From Monocercomonoides exilis PA203 (Eukaryota > Protista > Preaxostyla), in NCBI GenBank assembly GCA_001643675.2, contig LSRY02000019.1, positions 62,001 through 126,000 of the forward strand: 64,000 nt of DNA. Direction: 5' to 3'. Position numbers and translations under genes: made by a program. Positions 6,121 to 17,111 of this stretch are shown here, piece after piece. The notes beneath the pieces were generated by a model that saw only the letters and a program-made list of their open reading frames with translations, did not search any database and was not told the origin of the DNA. How positions within the stretch are numbered: the stretch's first letter is position 1; each line of letters begins with the position of its first letter.

Positions 6121-8399
6121 TCATTTTTCGTTTGTTGCAGTAACGATAATTCCTGATGGAATTGATACAACAAGAATCGGAGGTATTTCAAGTTGGTCAA
6201 TAAGTTCAATATGCTCTGATAAATTCCTCAAATTATCCTCCTGCTCATCAAACAACGAATCTTCACTTTCATTTGTGCTGTTTGATTCATCCTCTTCTGA
6301 ACTATCATTTTCGTCATTTTCATTATGCTCCTCAGCATTCTCTCGAATATTTCTTCTTCTGTGATGTTCCTGGTGCTCATGCACAATCTCGTCTCGCCCT
6401 TGTTCCGGTGTCAGTTCGCCCATTAGCATCAGTATGTGCAAGAGTGGATTGATCTCTCTCATCTCATGCTGCTCTCTTTCCCTCTCGTTTTCTCCCGCAT
6501 TGTTTCTGTTCCTTCTCCGATTCCTTCCGTTCTGCGTGGCAAAGTCACCAAATAGCAGCCCGTTTTGCAATCCAGCAGCAGGAGAATTCGTGTCTGTCTG
6601 CCTTTCTATGTCAATGTCAATCTCATCCACAAGTGCTCTTCTCTCTCTTTGCGTTAGTCTTCTTTGCTGACGACCCTGGTGCCTCCTCTCTGTTGTATTT
6701 CTGGTTCTACCATTTTCATCCCCTTCGTCATCGTTGCCTTCTTGCTCACCGTGAATCTCATCCAAATCTTCTTCTAAGCCTAACAATTCCTCAAAGTGTA
6801 CTGCTTCTTCCACTCTTCTTTCTTCCTCTTGTGAAAGCACTCTCAAATATAGTCCGTTCTTTTTCGCCCTAAAGCTGATTCTGTTCATGAAAGTAACGTG
6901 GTTAAGGTCAATCCCTTGGAACAGGTTTGTTTCGCCTCTTTCCCCGCCATGCTGATTAGCATTAGCATTAAAAATTGCGGCTCGTCTCCTTCGCTCAGCA
7001 ATTGCATTTCTCAGCTCTGTTTCTCCAGCCTTTCCAAATGAAATGATGTCGAAGAAAATCGAGCAAAGCACAATTGTTGTCAAGTCTCCAAAGTCGTCCA
7101 TAATAAGTGTAATGAATCCGAGTGGTTGTGGAAGTGCAATGAAGAATATAAGATATATGCACCGAACGGCTGCATACACAATAAACACAAACTGAAGCCT
7201 GGAAAAGAATGTTAGCCGATTGCGGAAAGGAAGGGAGAAACTCATTGGGTGAAGTGGAGAAAGAAGAAGTTGATTCTGCAACGCAGTTTTGTTTGTCTTC
7301 ACGTTGGAGAACCAGTGATATGTAAGAAGAAATAAAATGATTATAAGAGCAATAAATGTCATTTTGTCGTAGAATATCATCATCATTCGAAAACCCATCG
7401 ACGCAAGAGATACAATCACAATTGCAGCCCATGATGTCTTTTGGGTTTTTCTGTGTGTAACAGATGATCCCAGAGCCCCAAGCCATAGGAATACAATTGG
7501 AATTACACATCCAATTGATGTTACAATCTCTAACAATATGCGGAACCATAATGGTCGTTCACGTCGGTAAAGCGGAATCGTATCAATGCTCAATGCACGT
7601 AATAATGAAGAGATGACATGCACGATGCACATGCATATTTGCGTCCAATGCAATATGCATCCAACTTCAAGTGAATGAAAAAAAATCACACGAATAAGAC
7701 TATAAACTGTCAACAACGCCCAAATCCCTGTTGATGCATAATAATAAATAGGAAGCGGAATTTCGTAAGAAGGGATATGCACGCTGCCAGGATTAAGAAA
7801 AGATCCACTCACAGACACCCTTCCGGAACGAAGTTCGCAATTTGACAAAGCAATTGTGTACTGATTGTTATCTGGAATAGGAAGGTGATAGTTGCCAGAA
7901 GATTTTATGTCCAATAAAGATAATTTTTGTTTATATTTGGGCTCCTTTTTATTTAAAAATGGAATTTCAATGAAAAAACAATATAAATGTAAATGTCAAA
8001 CTTGGAGGTCTCTCATAAACACAATGCATTCTTTTGTTCCATCTCGCACGTGGTGATCCATTTTTTCGAACTGTACAGTGGGCATAGAAAAAAGTGTCAA
8101 TTTCTGATTCTTATTTCTTTATACAAAAATATAACTTTCAAAATAAATAATATCTGGCAAACTGCATATCTACATGTATTTCGACAAAACCCCCTATTTA
8201 ATAAGAAAAGAGTACATTTGTTTTATCCAAATAAAAAGCAGATACAATTGTTATAAATTATTTAGGATAAAAATAAACCTCTTAAAAAACTAAAGTTACC
8301 AATAACATATAATCTAGACGAAACTGACCAACTACGTTTAAATTCTAATGAATAGCATTGTCTCAAAATTAAAAATGCTGAAACAAAGAAATACAGCAT
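6121..8399 (-). CDS. GPR107/GPR108/TMEM87-like (Lung 7-TM/GOST family) seven-transmembrane protein, 4 exons
   Basis: Spliced N-terminus MLYFFVSAFLILRQCYS...GNFSFLRGGFVEIHV joins the 597-aa ORF through three GT-AG introns. NPGSVHIPSYEIPLPIYY resembles the family motif NP.gyLsagEiPLp.lY. About 7 hydrophobic segments follow, then a charged tail. Confidence 0.75.
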
Positions 8400-8561
8400 C
8401 GGTAAAACGAAAACAGAAATATTAAAAATACTATGGGAATATGAAGAATGGAATCATTATTCTTTTCAAAAATGAATGGAAGAGATCGATAAATTCTCTA
8501 AGATAATGAAGAACTTAAAAATGACAAACAAAAATTTTATATGGTTTAGAGATCATATAAC

Positions 8562-11500
8562 ATGGATTCTTCGATAATAAAGGCATTTATTGAGATGCTA
8601 AAAGCATCAAAATTGCAACCAGATCTACAGCCTTCGCATTACATTAATTTTTGGTCATTGATGAAAAATACCACAAATGCTGCAATTGTTCTTCAATCAT
8701 TGATACAAAAAGCGTGTGGAGTTCAATCTGACCAAGTTGAACAGTATCTGGCGAATGTTAAAGCGAAAAAAAAGCCACCAGAACGTGAAAAAGTCGAAGG
8801 CATGATATTTCAGTTCGTTTATAAAAAAATAAAAGAGAAAAATATGAAATGTTTTTCAAATTATTTTTCAGAAACAAAAATAGCAGCTTATTTGAATAGT
8901 GCATTTTATCTTTCGTTATTTTGCGACTGCCCCCCAACAAATGTTGAAGTTACAGAATCAATCAACCTTTGGTAAATGTTTTTTTGTTTGGTTTTCTGGG
9001 TTATATTGTTTTCCATTTTTAGGAAAGTAACAATTGGAACTTCAATGGAAGAGAAAACCGCTCATGGAGAACAGCTTGCATTTGTGTGGAGATTGTGCTT
9101 CTAGTGATATTTATAGATTTATGTTTTCAATTTTTCTTTTCAGTTCCATAAGGTTCTGACAACCTCAGGGCAAACAAGAGAAAACGTAATTTCAAGATTA
9201 TTTGACATACTTGTTTACATTCCCCTTCATAACTCTAACGCGCTTACAAGCAGTCTACGTCTCACCACACATTTTTCAAACCATCGTATGAGGAAAAAAA
9301 TGATGTTTTGATATTTTGAGATTTAATTTCTTTTCTTTAAAAATATTTAATGTCAGACATTGTCCTTCTTGTGATGATTTATTTGCTGCGTTGCACGAAT
9401 TTCCGGAGTTTTGGAGGGGATGCGTTTGGTGGTGATGCCCAACTGAACCTGTCAGTCATGAAAAAGAGTGAGGCTCCCCAAGCAGAGTCTTCAAGCACAG
9501 AAAGCGGAAAGCCACAGCAGTCACATGCACACGAGCCGATCGAAAGCGAACTGGCATTTTCAAAGCCGAAGTGGATTTCGGAGGCGTCGGACGTGATGGA
9601 AGGGTGGATGGCGTCGTCGTCTTCGCCGCTTTTTGACTCGCCGTTCTACAAAGAGTGGCAGAGGAGAGACATCCTGGCAGAGGAGCAGCGGAAGAAGGCG
9701 AAAAAGAAGAAGGAAGAGCAGCGTGGGAAGGAAGAGAAAGCAGCAGGCGAAGGCGACGAAAAACGAGAGGCAGATTCTGCGAGTGTTGGGGCTGAGGGAA
9801 AAGGCAGTGTCAATGAAGGAGCTAATATTGCCAGCACTTCTCTTTCTACCAGTGCTTCAGGTTCTGCGGGTTCTGATGCAAATGATACAGACACACAGAA
9901 CAATGCTGAAGCTAATAAGGAAGAGATGGGCGAAGCAAAAGAAGCCACTCAAACTGATATCAAAACAGACTCACAGCTCAATTCATCTGCTGAATCAACA
10001 GAGAAAGCTGCGGAAACAGACAAAGAATCATCTTCAGCTGTATCAGAGCAGACGAACTGTTCGACTGATACTTCAATTTCATCGTCTCAAGAACAGTCTC
10101 AGAGTGGAGAATCAACAGCTGCTCAGCAACCTTCTTCATCTGCTGAACAAAAAAGTGCAGAATCAGAAACATCTTCAAGCCATTCTTCCTCTTCCAACGA
10201 CGAAAACACGAAAAAAAGTGATAGCTCCGAATCCAAACTGGAGCAAGAAGCAGAATCGCAGTCGTCCACAGACAAAGACACATCAGATCAGAATGTTCCA
10301 CCGCCGTGCTACACAACTCTTTCTTCTCTTCCTCCACACGCAAGTGCTCAGCCGTCCATTTCACTCCTCCGCAAAGTGGTGTGGCAGAAGATGCAGCTGT
10401 CGTCCCGCCTGCTGCAGCACATCTCTGACCTCTTCCTCCTCCCCAACATCTCCGAGCGCATCCTCTCTCTCTGCCTCTCTCTCCGCCACCTGCTCCTCAC
10501 CCGCTGCCCAGCTGCTGACCCCATCTCCCTCCTCTCTCTGGCTGTGCACTTGAGGCCGTTTGTGCTGCAACCGCATCCTGTTGGTGGAGTGGCAAGGGAC
10601 ACATTGACGGTGGTGCAGGAGGAGCTGTGTGTGACAGGGATGACAGCGATGAAGGCGAAGTACACTGCACTCTGCGACGAAGAGGAGAGAGTGAGGAGAA
10701 TCGCAGGGAAAGAACAGAGTGGAGGAGGAAGAGGAGAAGGAGAAGGAAGAGAAGGGAGAAGAAGAAGAGCAAGCTCAGCAGATAGAAATAGCAGAGACAC
10801 AGAAGTGACTAAGCTGAGCCGCAGCAACAGCAAAAGCAGCTGCAACAGTCTGAATCAGCCACAAATGACAGAGAATCCAACAGAATCGCAAAATGAGCTT
10901 ATTCTTCGTGAGAGCATTCCAACAGACATCCGCCCGACCATTCCAGTTGTGACATCTGACTTTGCTCTGCAGCATCCGATGGCATCTCTTGTGCTCACAC
11001 AGTCAACACGCTCTGTGCACCACCACAAGAGACAGAATAATAATAGTAATAGTTATAATAATAGGACAAGTGCAGAGGGAAAGGGTAACACACAGGAGAG
11101 TAATCTTTCTGCTGTTAATTCACCTGTGGGAAAGAGGATTGCTTCTGGCAGTTATTCTCCAATTGTGTCATCAATATCATCATCATATTCATCATCATCA
11201 TATTCATCATCATCATATTCTTCTTCTTCTCTTTCATCCACCACTCCTCCTTCGATAGTCCCTCCTCGCCCACCAATTGAAGTGCTTGTCTCATCCTTCC
11301 TGGCTGACATCATCAACTGCTACATCCCCCTCAACTTCCCTTCTCCTGCTGCTGTCTCTGCTATGAATCCGACTTCTTCATCTGAATCTTCTGAGTCTTC
11401 TGACACATCTTCTTCTTTTTCCTCTTCTTCCTCTTCCTCCTCTTCTGATTCGTCTGGTTCTGCTTCTGATTCTTCTTCTGATTCTTCTTCCGATACTTCT

Positions 11501-14500
11501 TCTGCTTCAAACACAACAGACACCACATCTTCTGAACACACTTCAGTCACTGAAACATCTTCACCATCCTCTTCCTCTTCCTCTTCCTCTCCTTCCTCTT
11601 CCACCCCCATCCCCTCCTCCCCTTCCCCTTCCCCTTCCTCCTCTCCTCCTCCTCTTTCCTCTGACATTCTCTCTCCCTCTCTCCTCTCCCATGTGGCAGG
11701 CGCTGCCATGTGTCTCCCTTCCTCCCGTCTGATGCCTCTTCTCCATCGCATCATGCGCATCTTCAGCGACCTCTGCGAAGCCAAAAAGGAGTTCCTCTCA
11801 CAAGTCATCGCTTCTTCGGCTGTCCCTTCCACTTCCACTCCTTCTGCTGCATCGTCTGAGTCCTCCCTCCGCCGCTCTGTCTCTCTCTTCTCTTCCTCCG
11901 TCGCTCAAAACACTGTTGCTTCTTCTTCTTCTTCTTCCTCTTCCTCCTCTTCCTCTTCTCCTTCCTCTTCTCCTTCCAATGCTAATAATGATGCCAATAA
12001 TCCTCACAATCTCAGCAACCTCAGCAAAGTCAGCAGTGCCAGCAAGCTGCCCAACTTTTCTGTCTCCTCGTTTGTCGCTCTCACCTCCTCAGACACTTCT
12101 TCTGAGCACAGACGGGCGGTTGTGGAGTGGCTGTGGCAGGTGAAGGAAGAGGGCACGCAACATTACAAGGCGTTCCTTCGCCTTCCTCCTCTCATGCAGA
12201 GGGTTCAGATGGAATATATAGATGATTGTAATGTGAAGAATGTTTGCTCAACAATGTCAAGCTCTCCTAATTCTTCTTCTTCTTCTCATTCTTTGGCTGC
12301 TAATCTCTCAACTGCCCAACTTACACGAACGAACTCCTCTTCCTCTCCACAACGTCCTCTTTCTCTTTCTCTCACTTCATCCACAAATAATCGCAGTTCA
12401 TTATCATTATCATCTTCAGCATTCCCTTCTTCTTCCTCTTCTTCTTCCTCTTCTTCCTTCTCTTCCCCTTCCATTCTCTCCAGTTCTCTTCCACTTCAGT
12501 TGGTTTCTCCTCATTTGCCTCGTCTATTCCACCAGCCAGATCTGATGCGCCATGACTTCTCCTGTTTCGTCCTCAGCGACGGCGACTACAACACCCTCAC
12601 TGGCATCATCGTTGAGGGACTGCTTAGCTTGCAGGATGATGAATGGAATAACTATGCTCTTTCTTCTTCTTCTTCTTCTTCTAATTCTCCAAGAGGAAAA
12701 CTCTTTGAACAGTCTCTTCTTTCCAATGATCATTCACTATCATCTTCTTCTTCTCCCTCTCCCTTTCCCTCTCCCTCTTCTTCCACTCATAAGTCTCAAC
12801 CGTCCCCTCCTCTTCGCATCGTCCTGATGGGCGGAAATTTGGAAGTGCACAAAGCAGTCAACGCGCTCTTCCAGGTGCAGACGACGTTTCCCCATCTGCT
12901 GAAGCACAAGCAGGTGCTCTTCTACCTCGTGCCCCTCACTCCTCACAAGAGAGACCCAGACGCTGCTCGTGTTGCAAACAGAGGGAATGGGCAAACAGGT
13001 GCAGAGAATATGGGCGCTTTGGCTGCTGGCTTGTCGTTCGGGTCGTTTGATGTGGGAAATGCTTCGGCACCGCCGTCTTCTACTTCTCCATCTGTTTCAT
13101 CGTCTGTTTCATCATCGTCATCATCCTCTTCTTCTTCTTCAATTTCAACTTCTTCACTTTCTTCTCCTTCTTCTCCTTCAGCTACCACATCCACCACCAC
13201 CACCACCACATCCCTCCCTCTCTCTTCTCTTCCACTCCCCCGCTCTCCTCTCGAAGATGAGAATCGTCTTGGCCTCTATCTCTCTTCCATCGATCCCTGG
13301 TTCCATCACCTCGTGTTCCTCCCTTGGTCTTCTCAGCAGCCACTGGCGTTTCCTTCGATGAAGACAACTGCTGCTGATTTCTCGTCGCTGGAGCAGAAGA
13401 ACGGGGCGTGGACGGTTGGAGTGGAGGGAGAGGAGGAGGAAGAAGAGGAGAAAGAGAGAGAGAAGGAGAAAGAGGAAAAAGGAAAGGAAAACAAGGTTTG
13501 TTGTTTAGAAAATGAGGCTGTTACTGTATCTGAGGGATCTGCTCAGAAAGATGAATGCAAAGAGCAAAGCAACTCAGAGAAACAAAAGACAAACACAAAG
13601 ACAACAAATGAAGAAGAATCCAATGGAGAAGGAAAAGAAGAGAAGAAGAAGGAAGAAGAAAAAGAGCAAAAAGAGCAATCAACAGAAAAAGCAGAAGAAG
13701 CGAAGGATTCGACAACAGAGAGTGAGACAGATGCCAAAATGAATGAAGCATCAAATGTGACACAGCCATTCTCTCTTTCAGCTGCTGACAGCCAACAAAG
13801 TGCCTGTGAGCATTCGAATGCTGCTGCAATCTCTTCTTCTTCTTCTTCCACCTCATCTTCATCTCCTTCTTCATCTTCTCCTTCTCCTTCCTCCCCTTCC
13901 AACAGCCAACTATCCAAAAGACTCTCCCTCACTCGTTCACGTGCCTCTTCCGTCTCCTCCAGCAGCATCCACCAGAACATCCTCCACCCTCACTCTTCTT
14001 CTCTCTCTGCCTCCTCCAGCTGCCTCGCTTCTGCCTCGCTCTCCCCTTCTTTCCTATGCAAGCGCGCCTCCTTCTCTTCTCTTTCTCCTGTCACACAGCT
14101 CGTCCACTACGCCGAGCACAGCCACAGAGGACATGTTACCCACACCCACCTGCACACTGCTGTCTCTCTCCCTTCTGCCCTCCACACAGGATTCGCCTCT
14201 CTCTCTCTAAGACCTCCCCTCGTATCACCTGCTGCCAGACACCTTTCGCAGCTGACGGCTCTGCACAAATCGAGAATAACACTCTCTTCGTTCGACGAGG
14301 CAGCCCCTCTGCATGCAGTGGACGATGCAATGCAGCTGCTGCTGACGATGGCACAACACAAACGAGCACTGAACATTTGGATAGCAGAGATGTGGTCGAA
14401 GGGCAAGCAGTGGGCAGAAGAGAGAGAGAGGAGAGAGAGGGAGATGGAGGCAGAGAGGCAGCAGATAAGACGAGGAGAGGCTGATTCGTCAAAGTCAGCG

Positions 14501-15846
14501 GCGAAACAGGAGGAGCTCCCGAAACCCATCTGGGCATGGTTCACGCCATATTCCTCTTCTTCTCTCTCTCAGTCATCTTCTGCTTCTACTTCTTCTCTGT
14601 CTTCATCATCATCATCTTCTTCTTCTTCCTCTTCTTCCTCATCATCATCCTCCTCTTCTTCTTCTTCCTTCTCTTACTCAGGTGCAACATCCACATATGC
14701 TCAATCAGAACTCATAGAAGTTCCAGTGTCTTCTCTTTCTTTGACTCTTTTGGAGGCAGCCGACGATGTTTCGAAGAATCCGCTGCCTGAACGGGTGTTG
14801 AGGGAGCAGCAGCTGAAAAAAGAAGAAGAAGAAAGAGAGAAAGCGATGAAGGAAGCACTCGAAAAGGGAGAGGCAGTTGAAGGAGATAACTCCAACAGAA
14901 CAGGCGAAGAAGGTGCAGATGATCTGATCTCCACACAAAGTGTGTCACAAATGGGGGACGACTCTTCTCTCTCCACACCTCCCACATCCTGTGTGGACGA
15001 TGACCTCTCATCTGCTGCTCCTCTTTCTCCTCTTTCTCCGCTGGCTGCCCTGTCAGACGCTGCTGGCTGTCTCGATGCAGCTCAGTCAGCACAGTGGATG
15101 AGTCTCCACAGATGCGCCTTCTGCCTGCAGATGCTGTTGTGTGTGCCAGGCGTGGATAGCTTGCAGATTGTCCACTCTCTCATCGCCAGAAAGAATGTGA
15201 AGCATATCACACCGTGCAGACTGAGGCTGACTTTCTTGGAGGTATGCAATTGAATCTTTTCTTTATTTGGTTGAATGAAACATATATATTGTGATTAATA
15301 TTGTCATTGTCATTTTGCATATATGTTTTTATAATTAATAATCTGTCAAATTTTCATTCCATTATTTTTTTTATTTTTCTATTTGACATGAACCGACTTT
15401 GCACTTAGGTCTCTACCGATAACACTCCGAAGGATGAGATCACAATTGCCACCACAGAGACGTGCTACTATTTATCAGCCACGTCTGTCCCACACTCAGA
15501 CGACATTGGCTTTGCCGGAGCGCCTCACCTGGACTCGCTGGAGCTTGCTGTTCTGAGCAACGACTGGTCAGTCAGCCATGCTGAGTCTAACACTCGCTCC
15601 AAATCAACAGCATCTTCGGCTCTTTCTTCTTCCTTCTCAACAACTTTTTCGCCTGTTCTTCGGTGCTTCCGCGTGGCGCATCTTCAGATAGACACTTTGG
15701 GGCGAGACGCTGATGATTCGTTCTCCTTTTGGCTCGATGGGCAATTCTATGGGCCAAGTGCTCGCTTGTGCTTATCTCTGAACCAATCAGATATAACGGG
15801 CGTTGACGACAAAATGAATATTGCGTCTTTCTTCCCTTCTTTTTAA
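8562..15846 (+). CDS. ~2300-aa Ser-rich protein with motifs of the PI3K class IB regulatory subunits p101/p84 (PIK3R5/PIK3R6-like), 5 exons
   Basis: Exons ~8562-8971, 9023-9083, 9144-9285, 9356-15241 and 15409-15846 splice in frame. Colinear blocks: INFWSL..IVLQSLIQK; LRPFVLQPHPVGGVARDTLTVVQEELCVTG; LRIVLMGG...QVLFYLVPL; NRLGLYLSSIDPWF; VDDAMQLLLTMAQHKRALNIW; C-terminal FSFWLDGQ...MNIASFFP. Confidence 0.65.
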
Positions 15847-16298: not shown

Positions 16299-17111
16299 TT
16301 AACATCCGCCATATCCACAGTTTGATGAACGCAAGCATCCTCCTCCTCCGTAGATTCCGCGGGAGTTGCAGTTCAAGCCAGCAGCATTGTTGTAGCAGTT
16401 GTTAGCGTTTCCGCAAGCATGGTTTCCGGCAATGCGGCGTGATCCAGCACACATGTTGGCATGTCCCATGTCATAGCAATCGTTTCCTGTGCTAATTGCT
16501 TCGTTTGCACGACGGATCATAAACTCATCTGCGCATTTTTGAGCATAGGCACGGTCACCATGAACGCGACATGCATCAGCATTCATGTGAGCTCCGTTAG
16601 CTGATCCGCAAATTGCACCTTGGTTGTATCCGCAGTTTCTGTTTCCAGCACCATAGCAATTGGCTGATTTTCCGTTCGCATATCCTGCACCTCCTCCTCC
16701 TCGGATAGATGATGTTTGACCATACATGCGTGGGGCTTGGCACATATTTCCGTAGTTACCATAGCCACCATTCATTCCATTGCATCCCATTCCGTTGTAT
16801 CCCATTCCGTTGTATCCCATTCCATTACATGCATCACAAGGAGCTGCACAAGCACACAACTCATAGCAGCATCCATCAGGATAGCAGCAAGATCCGCAGC
16901 ACATCTCCTCAAGTTCTTCATCAGAAAGTTCAGACCCACACAAAAAGCCCATTCCTCCCATACCCATTCCTCCCATGCCCAATGCACCAAGGCCTCCCAT
17001 TCCTCCCATGCCTCCGAATCCGCCCATTCCTAATCCGCCAAGTCCTCCCATTCCTCCCCAGAATTGTGCAGTCAATGCTGCAAGTGAAAGAAGTCCAACA
17101 AAGAATTTCAT
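16299..17111 (-). CDS. Secreted Gly/Met/Cys/Asn-rich low-complexity protein (candidate wall/coat structural protein)
   Basis: Single-exon 270-aa ORF with signal-like MKFFVGLLSLAALTA, a GGMGG/GGLGG tract, a Cys cluster (CCGSCCYPDGCC), GMG[YC]N repeats and a Cys/Gly/Asn-rich C-terminal half. Confidence 0.8.
   Translation of the reverse strand: MKFFVGLLSLAALTAQFWGGMGGLGGLGMGGFGGMGGMGGLGALGMGGMGMGGMGFLCGSELSDEELEEMCCGSCCYPDGCCYELCACAAPCDACNGMGYNGMGYNGMGCNGMNGGYGNYGNMCQAPRMYGQTSSIRGGGGAGYANGKSANCYGAGNRNCGYNQGAICGSANGAHMNADACRVHGDRAYAQKCADEFMIRRANEAISTGNDCYDMGHANMCAGSRRIAGNHACGNANNCYNNAAGLNCNSRGIYGGGGCLRSSNCGYGGC

What the first reader, a model, noticed from the sequence alone, without database searches (positions are those of the whole stretch)
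8562..15846. Cryptic PI3K-gamma adaptor (p101/p84, PIK3R5/6-like) in a protist, dispersed among Ser-rich insertions
Seen: six ordered blocks separated by long low-complexity tracts. They match, in order, human p101 segments as I recall them: INFWSL..IVLQSLIQK..VQ vs LNCWSL..ILLEQILQK..VQ; FVLQPHPVGGVARDTLTVVQEELCVTG vs FLTWPVPYCS....LLTFIDAELKAPG; LRIVLMGG..VLFYLVPL vs LRVVVFGS..LQFFYVPV; NRLGLYLSSIDPWF vs NDISHYLGMLDPWY; VDDAMQLLLTMAQHKRALNIW vs [34 protein letters not shown]..IASF vs KVDKVQI..FAVCLD..IMTF. Known: class IB adaptors are characterised in vertebrates and usually regarded as animal proteins. Inference: an ancient class IB-like PI3K regulatory module that pairwise searches could miss because insertions nearly triple its length.
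Basis: partly seen in the sequence, partly recalled or inferred. Interest (0 to 1): 0.85.

Follow-up and report, generated by a model that had tools for sequence, protein, structure and literature searches.

The report
Divergent p101-like PI3K adaptor gene
An expressed six-exon gene of the protist Monocercomonoides exilis encodes a roughly 2,290-residue, serine-bloated relative of the vertebrate PI3K-gamma adaptors p101/p84, and its relatives occur in many eukaryotic groups, so this adaptor family looks ancient rather than a vertebrate invention.

Summary
RNA contigs show a spliced six-exon gene (8562-15846, + strand, about 2,287 codons). About half of the big exon is Ser-rich or Glu/Lys-rich filler. 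The genome (82.3 Mb, 101 contigs; Monocercomonoides exilis) has three colinear paralogs.

Pfam and PDB searches with the gene itself find nothing significant. A 103-position profile of two blocks from the four paralogs finds 91 proteins among 1.84 billion. Most are 750-1,000 residues long and come from chytrid, dictyostelid, stramenopile, euglenid, Diphylleia, Anaeramoeba and environmental sources.

Of 43 full-length hits, 26 match Pfam PI3K_1B_p101. Their joint profile hits only p101 (E 4.6e-28) and p84 (5.8e-13) in the PDB. That profile holds no M. exilis sequence, yet it finds exon 1, three blocks of exon 5 and the last exon, in order. Across the whole genome it hits only the four loci.

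The exon-1 block belongs to an N-terminal module with no detectable counterpart in p101.

The genome has three class-I-like PI3Ks but no detectable G-gamma or G-alpha. Adaptor function is inferred, not shown. A word search of earlier scan notes on this genome found no p101 note.

The parts
8562..8799 (+).
   Evidence: The RNA contig starts at 8556 and the joint lies at 8799/8872. The family HMM matches the ORF 8550-8972 at E 6.9e-7, HMM positions 16-105. hhalign gives E 5.8e-5. There is no counterpart in p101.
8800..8871 (+). Intron 1: 72 nt, in frame, GC-AG
   Evidence: A spliced joint is seen in contigs of three of the four RNA runs. The ends are GCATGA..TTTCAG. The three paralogs have GT donors at the corresponding site.
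8872..8971 (+). Exon 2
   Evidence: Joints at 8799/8872 and 8971/9023. A weak colinear hhalign match, E 0.0076, columns 76-104.
8972..9022 (+). Intron 2: 51 nt, GT-AG
   Evidence: Joint seen in all four RNA runs.
9023..9083 (+). Exon 3
   Evidence: Joints.
9084..9143 (+). Intron 3: 60 nt, GT-AG
   Evidence: Joint seen in all four RNA runs.
9144..9285 (+). Exon 4
   Evidence: Joints.
9286..9356 (+). Intron 4: 71 nt, GT-AG
   Evidence: Joint seen in all four RNA runs.
9357..15241 (+). Exon 5: 5,885 nt. It holds the conserved blocks among Ser-rich and Glu/Lys-rich inserts.
   Evidence: One open frame. RNA contigs lie on it without mismatch up to 14399, the end of the laid stretch, with holes at repeats. 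The family HMM gives a full-sequence E of 2.9e-22.
10400..10651 (+). Block 2: helical solenoid segment that carries the family's most conserved N-terminal motif. It corresponds to about p101 residues 63-145, inside the p110-gamma-binding region.
   Evidence: HMM positions 193-284, domain E 1.1e-7. Genome-wide E 3.9e-6. hhalign E 4.1e-8. The AF2 model has pLDDT 87 and is five helices. The Foldseek rank-1 chain in the PDB is p101 (8sod_B, probability 0.98, but E 0.28).
12779..12943 (+). Block 3: strand, Gly-Gly turn, helix and strand of the alpha/beta domain. It corresponds to about p101 residues 513-566.
   Evidence: HMM positions 501-552, domain E 2.4e-11. Genome-wide E 6.2e-10. This is the only direct Pfam hint: PF10486 positions 499-554, E 0.38.
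13247..13393 (+). Block 4: corresponds to about p101 residues 601-640
   Evidence: HMM positions 549-595, domain E 5.6e-4. hhalign E 5.3e-6.
14285..14407 (+). Block 5: helix that closes the alpha/beta domain. It corresponds to about p101 residues 648-680.
   Evidence: The paralog profile against the family gives hhalign E 1.2e-4, columns 601-641. The p101 string is aligned.
15242..15408 (+). Intron 5: 167 nt, GT-AG, phase 0. Predicted only; no reads were laid here.
   Evidence: Ends GTATGC..ACTTAG. The frame continues. The same exon end, reading ..LTFLE, is present in the C34 and C2 paralogs; C39 has a diverged form.
15409..15846 (+). It corresponds to about p101 residues 748-876.
   Evidence: HMM positions 720-831, E 9.3e-8. 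Genome-wide E 1e-4. Alignment A4. The AF2 model has pLDDT 75.5. The 16 structural matches with Z of 3.9 or more are all DAG, sphingosine, NAD or acylglycerol kinase-type chains, or p84 (Z 5.7) and p101 (Z 5.0).

Best explanation
The gene encodes a very divergent, insertion-expanded member of the p101/p84 (PIK3R5/PIK3R6) family of class I PI3K regulatory subunits. It is one of four paralogs in Monocercomonoides exilis.

Shown here:
- The gene is spliced and transcribed.
- It is colinear with an about 850-residue family found in many eukaryotic groups.
- That family is homologous to p101 and p84 along the helical solenoid, the alpha/beta domain and the C-terminal beta-sandwich.
- The Ser-rich inserts sit between the conserved blocks. 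Two of them lie where p101 has loops that were unresolved in the cryo-EM structure.

Inferred:
- The protein is a non-catalytic adaptor.
- Its N-terminal solenoid docks on the C2 region of one or more of the three class-I-like PI3K catalytic subunits of this genome.
- Its C-terminal lipid-kinase-like alpha/beta plus beta-sandwich part brings the complex to a membrane or to an activator.
- The activator is probably not G-beta-gamma, because heterotrimeric G-protein genes were not found.
For: Gene model and expression: spliced RNA contigs from four runs of one study.

Paralogs: three colinear loci on contigs C34, C39 and C2.

Family:
- The paralog profile A2 finds 91 proteins at E up to 1e-3 among 1.84e9. 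The match lies at about residues 500-680 of 750-1,000-residue proteins.
- 26 of 43 match PF10486, best E 1.4e-13. Cavenderia, Triparma, Ploeotia and MAST-4 members score above the Pfam cut-off.
- Profile A3 hits only p101 (4.6e-28, three colinear stretches covering p101 63-265, 478-566 and 601-876) and p84 (5.8e-13) in the PDB.

Link back to this gene:
- The A3 HMM holds no M. exilis sequence. Against 1,670 six-frame ORFs it scores exon 5 at 2.9e-22, exon 6 at 9.3e-8 and exon 1 at 6.9e-7. The best unrelated ORF scores 0.051.
- In the whole 82-Mb genome it hits only the four loci.

Fold:
- The exon-6 model matches only lipid/NAD-kinase-type chains, p84 and p101. These are the same neighbours that the p101 structure paper reports (PMC8397274).
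- The block-2 model's top PDB chain is p101.

Context: three class-I-like PI3Ks with C2, helical and kinase domains. The one tested against the PDB has p110-alpha as its best match, at 1e-108.
Against: - Direct searches with this gene or its paralogs do not reach p101. Pfam PF10486 gives only 8.9 bits (cut-off 23) on one block, and the PDB searches give nothing. The link is therefore transitive.
- Blocks C to G in the middle of exon 5 are conserved among the paralogs, but they do not map significantly to the family profile.
- Fold-search scores are middling: Z 5-6.7, and Foldseek E above 0.1. The models were built from alignments of the same family.
- The motif Trp of the solenoid segment is Gln in this copy.
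- No binding evidence exists. The co-fold gave no answer.
- No G-gamma or G-alpha was found, so the best-known input of p101 is probably missing.
Confidence: 0.82

Rival explanations
1. The protein is a true homolog of p101/p84, but in this lineage it does not serve PI3K. It would be a scaffold or membrane adaptor for some other partner, and p101's PI3K role would be a later, animal-side acquisition.
For: No binding was shown, and the co-fold gave no answer. The family carries an N-terminal module of about 170-190 positions that p101 lacks. G-protein genes were not found.
Against: The part best conserved from protists to p101 is the solenoid segment. It lies inside p101 residues 25-175, which suffice for p110-gamma binding (PMC8397274). 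The genome keeps three class-I-like PI3Ks.
Confidence: 0.13
2. It is a PACS-type cargo-sorting adaptor, a relative of phosphofurin acidic cluster sorting proteins, rather than a p101-type protein.
For: Six of 43 family members also match Pfam Pacs-1 in the alpha/beta region, best E 8.7e-9.
Against: The Pacs-1 matches cover only the alpha/beta segment. The N-terminal solenoid matches are to p101 alone. The family profile aligns to p101 almost end to end. No Pacs-1 match was found for this gene or its paralogs.
Confidence: 0.03
3. It is an active lipid kinase of the diacylglycerol/sphingosine kinase type.
For: The exon-6 model's best structural matches are DgkB, YegS and SphK1. One family member matches Pfam DAGK_cat at 3.2e-6.
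Against: No DAGK_cat match for this gene or its paralogs at E up to 10. The Gly-Gly-Asp of the family consensus is Gly-Gly-Asn here. p101 has the same fold without catalytic residues (PMC8397274).
Confidence: 0.02

Closest known systems
p101 (PIK3R5), regulatory subunit of PI3K-gamma; PDB 7mez_B, 8so9_B
   Same: The order of parts is the same: helical solenoid with the conserved hairpin motif, alpha/beta domain, beta-sandwich and a C-terminal strand. Five sequence blocks align to it through the family profile. Two long inserts, between blocks 3 and 4 and between blocks 4 and 5, fall where p101 has unresolved loops at 560-603 and 623-650.
   Different: This protein is about 2.6 times longer (2,287 against 880 residues). 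It has an extra N-terminal module with no counterpart in p101. There is no direct significant sequence match. It sits in an organism without detectable G-beta-gamma partners.
p84/p87 (PIK3R6); PDB 8aj8_B
   Same: The family profile hits it at 5.8e-13. The exon-6 model superposes on its residues 599-716 with Z 5.7.
   Different: The same differences as for p101. p84 is a vertebrate-only paralog of p101 according to PMC4617754.
Uncharacterised proteins of about 850 residues in other eukaryotes, for example Cavenderia fasciculata DFA_12108, Triparma TrST_g7980, Batrachochytrium BASA81_007738, and Diphylleia, Ploeotia, MAST-4 and Anaeramoeba proteins
   Same: These are the true nearest relatives. 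All blocks are shared, including the N-terminal module and the C-terminal motifs.
   Different: They lack the long Ser-rich inserts. Many of them are recognised by Pfam PF10486, whereas the M. exilis and Anaeramoeba members are not.
Diacylglycerol kinase DgkB, YegS, sphingosine kinase 1 and NAD kinases
   Same: The fold of the C-terminal beta-sandwich matches (Z 5-6.7), as reported for p101 itself.
   Different: No sequence match, and the nucleotide-binding Gly-Gly-Asp-Gly type motif is not intact. The protein is probably not an enzyme.

Membership tests
p101/p84 (PIK3R5/6) adaptor family, Pfam PF10486 in the broad sense | Colinear sequence homology to p101 over the solenoid, the alpha/beta domain and the beta-sandwich | tested here: met
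   The link is transitive. The gene matches family profile A3 at E 2.9e-22, 9.3e-8 and 6.9e-7 for three exons and at genome-wide E 6.2e-10. A3 matches p101 at 4.6e-28 and p84 at 5.8e-13, and these are the only PDB hits.
p101/p84 (PIK3R5/6) adaptor family, Pfam PF10486 in the broad sense | Direct match to the Pfam model above its gathering score (23 bits) | tested here: not met
   The best result is 8.9 bits, E 0.38, on block 3 only. There is nothing for the whole exon or for the paralogs. This is an operational threshold of a vertebrate-centred model. 17 of the 43 clear relatives also fail to match the model at E up to 1e-3.
p101/p84 (PIK3R5/6) adaptor family, Pfam PF10486 in the broad sense | Conserved solenoid hairpin motif (aromatic, Trp-Pro, Pro, then Leu/Leu/Glu and Pro-Gly) inside the p110-binding region | tested here: met
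   The motif is aligned in A5 and by hhalign. The Pro, the Glu and the trailing Gly are kept. The Trp is Gln in this copy. In the model this region is helical with pLDDT above 90.
p101/p84 (PIK3R5/6) adaptor family, Pfam PF10486 in the broad sense | C-terminal beta-sandwich (the G-beta-gamma-binding domain of p101) followed by a terminal strand with a conserved Pro | tested here: met
   A4 shows the Asp-Gly..Tyr-Gly-Pro motif and the terminal Phe-Phe-Pro motif. The model matches p84 residues 599-716 (Z 5.7) and p101 residues 732-835 (Z 5.0). Only the exon-6 half of the domain was modelled.
p101/p84 (PIK3R5/6) adaptor family, Pfam PF10486 in the broad sense | Forms a heterodimer with a class I PI3K catalytic subunit | tested here: inconclusive
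   Three class-I-like catalytic genes exist. The co-fold of block 2 with the RBD-C2 part of one of them gave no answer.
p101/p84 (PIK3R5/6) adaptor family, Pfam PF10486 in the broad sense | Mediates activation by G-beta-gamma | not testable with these tools
   No G-gamma match. The best 'G-alpha' match is a 183-residue Arf-like GTPase. G-beta was not searched.
PACS cytosolic sorting proteins (Pfam PF10254) | Match to the Pacs-1 model | tested here: not met
   No match for this gene or its paralogs at E up to 10. Only 6 of 43 relatives match, and only in the alpha/beta segment.
Diacylglycerol/sphingosine kinase catalytic family (Pfam PF00781) | Match to DAGK_cat and an intact Gly-Gly-Asp-Gly type motif | tested here: not met
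   No match. The sequence reads Gly-Gly-Asn-Leu at the aligned place. That this place equals the kinase motif rests on my memory of those families.

The most novel reading that the evidence does not exclude
[quoted passage not shown] They derive from a diacylglycerol/sphingosine-kinase-like enzyme and have been kept in metamonads, dictyostelids, stramenopiles, euglenids, CRuMs, chytrids and vertebrates. In M. exilis, four serine-expanded copies would couple three class I PI3Ks to inputs other than G-beta-gamma. This would overturn the published view that class IB adaptors arose in vertebrates and that protist class I PI3Ks have no regulatory subunit.
Probability: 0.45. Interest if true: 0.85.

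Novelty: new member of a known kind. Interest (0 to 1): 0.7.

Why it matters
The one phylogenetic study of PI3K subunits that I could find dates p101/p87 to the vertebrate ancestor. [quoted passage not shown] A survey of Entamoeba states that no class I regulatory subunit is known there or in Dictyostelium (PMC6563779). Full-text searches for p101 homologs outside vertebrates found nothing.

This gene, its three paralogs and the relatives they retrieve show that the family is widespread. A dictyostelid member is among them, so the question 'what regulates protist class I PI3Ks?' becomes testable in a tractable model.

The case also shows how low-complexity expansion hides conserved proteins in this genome from routine annotation.

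Caveat: several protist members pass the Pfam threshold, so domain databases may already flag them even though the searched literature does not.

Tried and rejected
- Pfam on the whole exon 5, on ten sub-blocks and on the paralog ORFs gave only one sub-threshold PF10486 hint.
- phmmer or hmmsearch of exon 6, of the compact C39 block and of the paralog profile A2 against the PDB found nothing at E up to 10.
- The word-index protein search with block 2 found 443 candidates, none scoring. The length window may have excluded the 850-residue relatives.
- The PF10486 model run over the whole genome gave only matches to model positions 251-494 at other loci, best 22 bits. This part of the model overlaps the disordered 311-512 loop of p101. 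I take these hits for composition artefacts and did not follow them up.
- Blocks C to G of exon 5 did not map to the family.
- The N-terminal module profile against the PDB gave no p101 or p84, only chance rows at E 0.23 or worse.
- Foldseek of both models against the PDB gave no match at E up to 0.001. I use the ranks only as consistency checks.
- Co-fold of block 2 with the RBD-C2 part of the C50 PI3K: no answer, score 0.00, partner fold uncertain, and my alignments were not used. This is no evidence either way.
- A rough tree on the block-3 columns groups the four M. exilis copies together. hmmalign placed only about 50 columns for three of them, so I do not rely on it.
- The spliced protein was never assembled. 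Every exon was searched by reference, so no full-length search or fold of the joined model was made.
Full report
WHAT IS THERE

The region holds one gene on the + strand. Contigs from four RNA runs of one study lie on it without mismatches. They carry four spliced joints, all upstream of the big exon. The contigs start at 8556, just before the ATG at 8562.

The exons are 8562-8799, 8872-8971, 9023-9083, 9144-9285, 9357-15241 and 15409-15843, with the stop at 15844-15846. The first intron (8800-8871) is 72 nt long, in frame, and has GC-AG ends. The other three confirmed introns are GT-AG.

The last intron (15242-15408, GT-AG, phase 0) lay outside the 6,000 bases I could lay reads on, so it is predicted only. 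The exon end before it is shared by the C34 and C2 paralogs.

The coding length is 6,861 nt, or 2,287 codons. Exon 5 is 24% serine. 54% of its residues lie in Ser-rich or Glu/Lys-rich windows. Every search used single exons or parts of exon 5 by reference.

ORGANISM

The assembly has 82.3 Mb in 101 contigs. A paralog on contig C2 (1,930,038 bases) is the database protein MONOS_5009 of Monocercomonoides exilis, recorded on a contig of that same length. The published long-read assembly of that species has 101 contigs (PMC8767320).

THE BLOCKS ARE REAL

Searching the genome with block 2 and with exon 6 found three further loci in which the same blocks occur in the same order:
- C34, near 867-876 kb
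- C39, near 770-777 kb
- C2, near 926-933 kb

An alignment of the four large exons shows sharp islands of conservation in a sea of unalignable low complexity.

In the C39 copy, blocks 3 and 4 are adjacent. The Ser-rich linker between them in the window gene is therefore an insertion. The first intron sits at the same place in all four copies.

DIRECT SEARCHES FAIL

Pfam finds nothing in the whole exon. In ten sub-blocks the only relevant row is PF10486 (PI3K_1B_p101) on block 3, at 8.9 bits and E 0.38, model positions 499-554. The paralogs give nothing. Sequence and profile searches of the PDB and a word-index protein search were blank.

THE BRIDGE TO p101

I built a 103-position profile of blocks 3 and 4. 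The compact C39 copy served as scaffold, and the separate blocks of the other three copies were added as rows (A2).

Against 1.84 billion representative proteins, A2 found 91 proteins at E up to 1e-3. Most are 750-1,000 residues long, with one continuous match around residues 500-680.

The named members come from these organisms:
- Batrachochytrium salamandrivorans
- Diphylleia rotans
- Anaeramoeba flamelloides
- Ploeotia vitrea
- a MAST-4 stramenopile
- Triparma
- Cavenderia fasciculata

All of them are annotated as hypothetical or are unnamed.

Of 43 full-length hits (alignment A3), 26 match PF10486 at E up to 1e-3 (best 1.4e-13), six match Pacs-1 and one matches DAGK_cat. In the members whose tables I read, the PF10486 matches lie mainly in the N-terminal part of the model, positions about 25-150.

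The A3 profile hits exactly three distinct PDB sequences at E up to 1: p101 twice (4.6e-28 and 4.8e-28) and p84 (5.8e-13). The p101 match consists of three colinear stretches that cover residues 63-265, 478-566 and 601-876.

BACK TO THE WINDOW

An HMM of A3 contains no M. exilis sequence. I searched it against all 1,670 six-frame ORFs of the window and the paralog loci:
- Exon 5 scored 2.9e-22, with three significant stretches: block 2 at HMM 193-284 (1.1e-7), block 3 at 501-552 (2.4e-11) and block 4 at 549-595 (5.6e-4).
- Exon 6 scored 9.3e-8, at HMM 720-831.
- The exon-1 ORF scored 6.9e-7, at HMM 16-105.
- The best unrelated ORF scored 0.051.

Block 5 reaches E 1.2e-4 with the paralog profile in hhalign, at columns 601-641. 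All matches are in order. Over the whole 82-Mb genome the same model hits only the four loci.

Alignments A4, A5 and A7 show the shared motifs directly.

The alignment printed contains the recalled p101 strings for blocks 2 to 6. They align to the profile positions that the window's blocks occupy.

Block 1 is different. Exon 1 is a genuine family module with a near-invariant Trp. A profile of that module does not find p101 or p84. The full profile puts p101 residues 63-74 at positions 207-218, the start of block 2. The Pfam matches on family members agree: model position 25 aligns at about residue 172 of P0003.

So p101 seems to lack, or has lost beyond recognition, the first 170-190 positions of the protist-type protein.

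FOLD

The p101 structure paper defines these parts (PMC8397274):
- a solenoid, residues 11-149 and 186-267
- an alpha/beta barrel, residues 150-185, 268-670 and 867-877
- a beta-sandwich, residues 671-834
- unresolved loops at 311-512, 560-603, 623-650 and 835-866

It reports diacylglycerol kinase, YegS and sphingosine kinase as structural neighbours.

Exon 6: an AlphaFold2 model built from A4 has pLDDT 75.5. Among 48,161 chains, only 18 match at Z of 2 or more. The 16 with Z of 3.9 or more are DgkB, YegS, SphK1, NAD kinases, acylglycerol kinase, p84 (Z 5.7, residues 599-716) and p101 (Z 5.0, residues 732-835).

Block 2: the model has pLDDT 87 and is five helices. p101 is the first-ranked of 350,542 PDB chains in Foldseek, though at E 0.28.

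These scores are modest, and the models rest on family alignments. They agree with the sequence result but do not stand alone.

The window's inserts between blocks 3 and 4 and between blocks 4 and 5 fall where p101 has its unresolved loops at 560-603 and 623-650.

CONTEXT AND MECHANISM

The genome encodes three proteins with PI3K C2, helical and kinase domains, on C50, C57 and C25. For C57, the one I tested, the best PDB matches are class I p110 subunits, at 1e-108. A ubiquitin-like segment ahead of the C2 domain looks like a Ras-binding domain to my eye, although the Pfam model for that domain found nothing.

No G-gamma match was found. The best G-alpha match is a 183-residue Arf-like GTPase.

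The most likely working model is therefore a non-catalytic adaptor. Its solenoid would dock on the C2 region of a class I PI3K. That part of p101 (residues 25-175) suffices for p110-gamma binding, and it is the part best conserved from protists to p101. Its lipid-kinase-like C-terminal half would bind a membrane or an activator other than G-beta-gamma.

All of this is inference from homology. A co-fold of block 2 with the RBD-C2 part of the C50 kinase gave no answer.

NOVELTY

The published phylogeny dates p101/p87 to vertebrates. A phosphoinositide survey states that Entamoeba and Dictyostelium have no known class I regulatory subunit. Four full-text searches found no report of p101 relatives outside vertebrates.

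The gene is a new and extreme member of a known family. The wider point is that the family spans most eukaryotic supergroups.

Several protist members pass the Pfam cut-off, so domain databases may already list them. I could not search subscription journals.

Noticed in passing
window 8800-8871: The first intron has a GC donor (GCATGA). It is 72 nt long and has no stop, so retention would add 24 in-frame residues. The three paralogs have GT donors at the same position.
   Followed up: partly
G000 C34:866500-876499 (L036), C39:769000-778999 (L037), C2:925000-934999 (L038): Three colinear paralogs of the gene. Only the C2 copy was found in the protein library, as MONOS_5009 (1,734 aa). That model appears to start inside the large exon and so to lack the N-terminal exons. 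The window gene and the C34 and C39 copies were not returned by the library search.
   Followed up: partly
family members P0012, P0013, P0018, P0076 and others: Pfam Pacs-1 matches the alpha/beta segment of six of 43 family members (best 8.7e-9). This suggests that the C-terminal region of PACS sorting proteins and the alpha/beta barrel of p101 are homologous.
   Followed up: no
G000 C50:269500-277500 (L039), C57:273000-281500 (L040), C25:171500-180500 (L041): Three class-I-like PI3K genes. Two have long Ser-rich inserts inside the C2 domain, and all three have one between the C2 and helical domains. The Pfam Ras-binding-domain model finds nothing in the genome, although an RBD-like ubiquitin-fold segment is conserved ahead of the C2 domain.
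   Followed up: partly
whole genome G000; L042 940-1491: No G-gamma match. The best G-alpha match is a 183-residue Arf-like GTPase, so heterotrimeric G proteins may be absent. G-beta was not searched.
   Followed up: partly
G000 C59:234513-234875 (L013): This is the best whole-genome match to Pfam PF10486 (22 bits, model positions 251-371) in a 1,785-residue open frame. It overlaps the disordered 311-512 loop of p101 and is probably a composition artefact, but it was not examined.
   Followed up: no
window 6121-7914 (-) and 16299-17111 (-): Flanking ORFs. One is a 597-residue protein with several hydrophobic segments and a long acidic, charged tail. The other is a 270-residue protein rich in Gly, Met, Cys and Asn with a hydrophobic N-terminus. 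Neither has a Pfam match at E up to 0.01.
   Followed up: partly
window 11200-11399, 12200-12399, 13800-13999: Summed contig depth jumps 10- to 100-fold here, and many non-canonical 'joints' link these places. They are Ser-codon repeats shared with many other transcripts, not splicing.
   Followed up: no
window 12809-12820 (Gly-Gly-Asn-Leu in block 3): The family consensus here is Gly-Gly-Asp followed by a helix. From memory this resembles the Gly-Gly-Asp-Gly nucleotide-binding motif of diacylglycerol, sphingosine and NAD kinases. Protist members may be closer to the enzymatic ancestor than p101 is.
   Followed up: no
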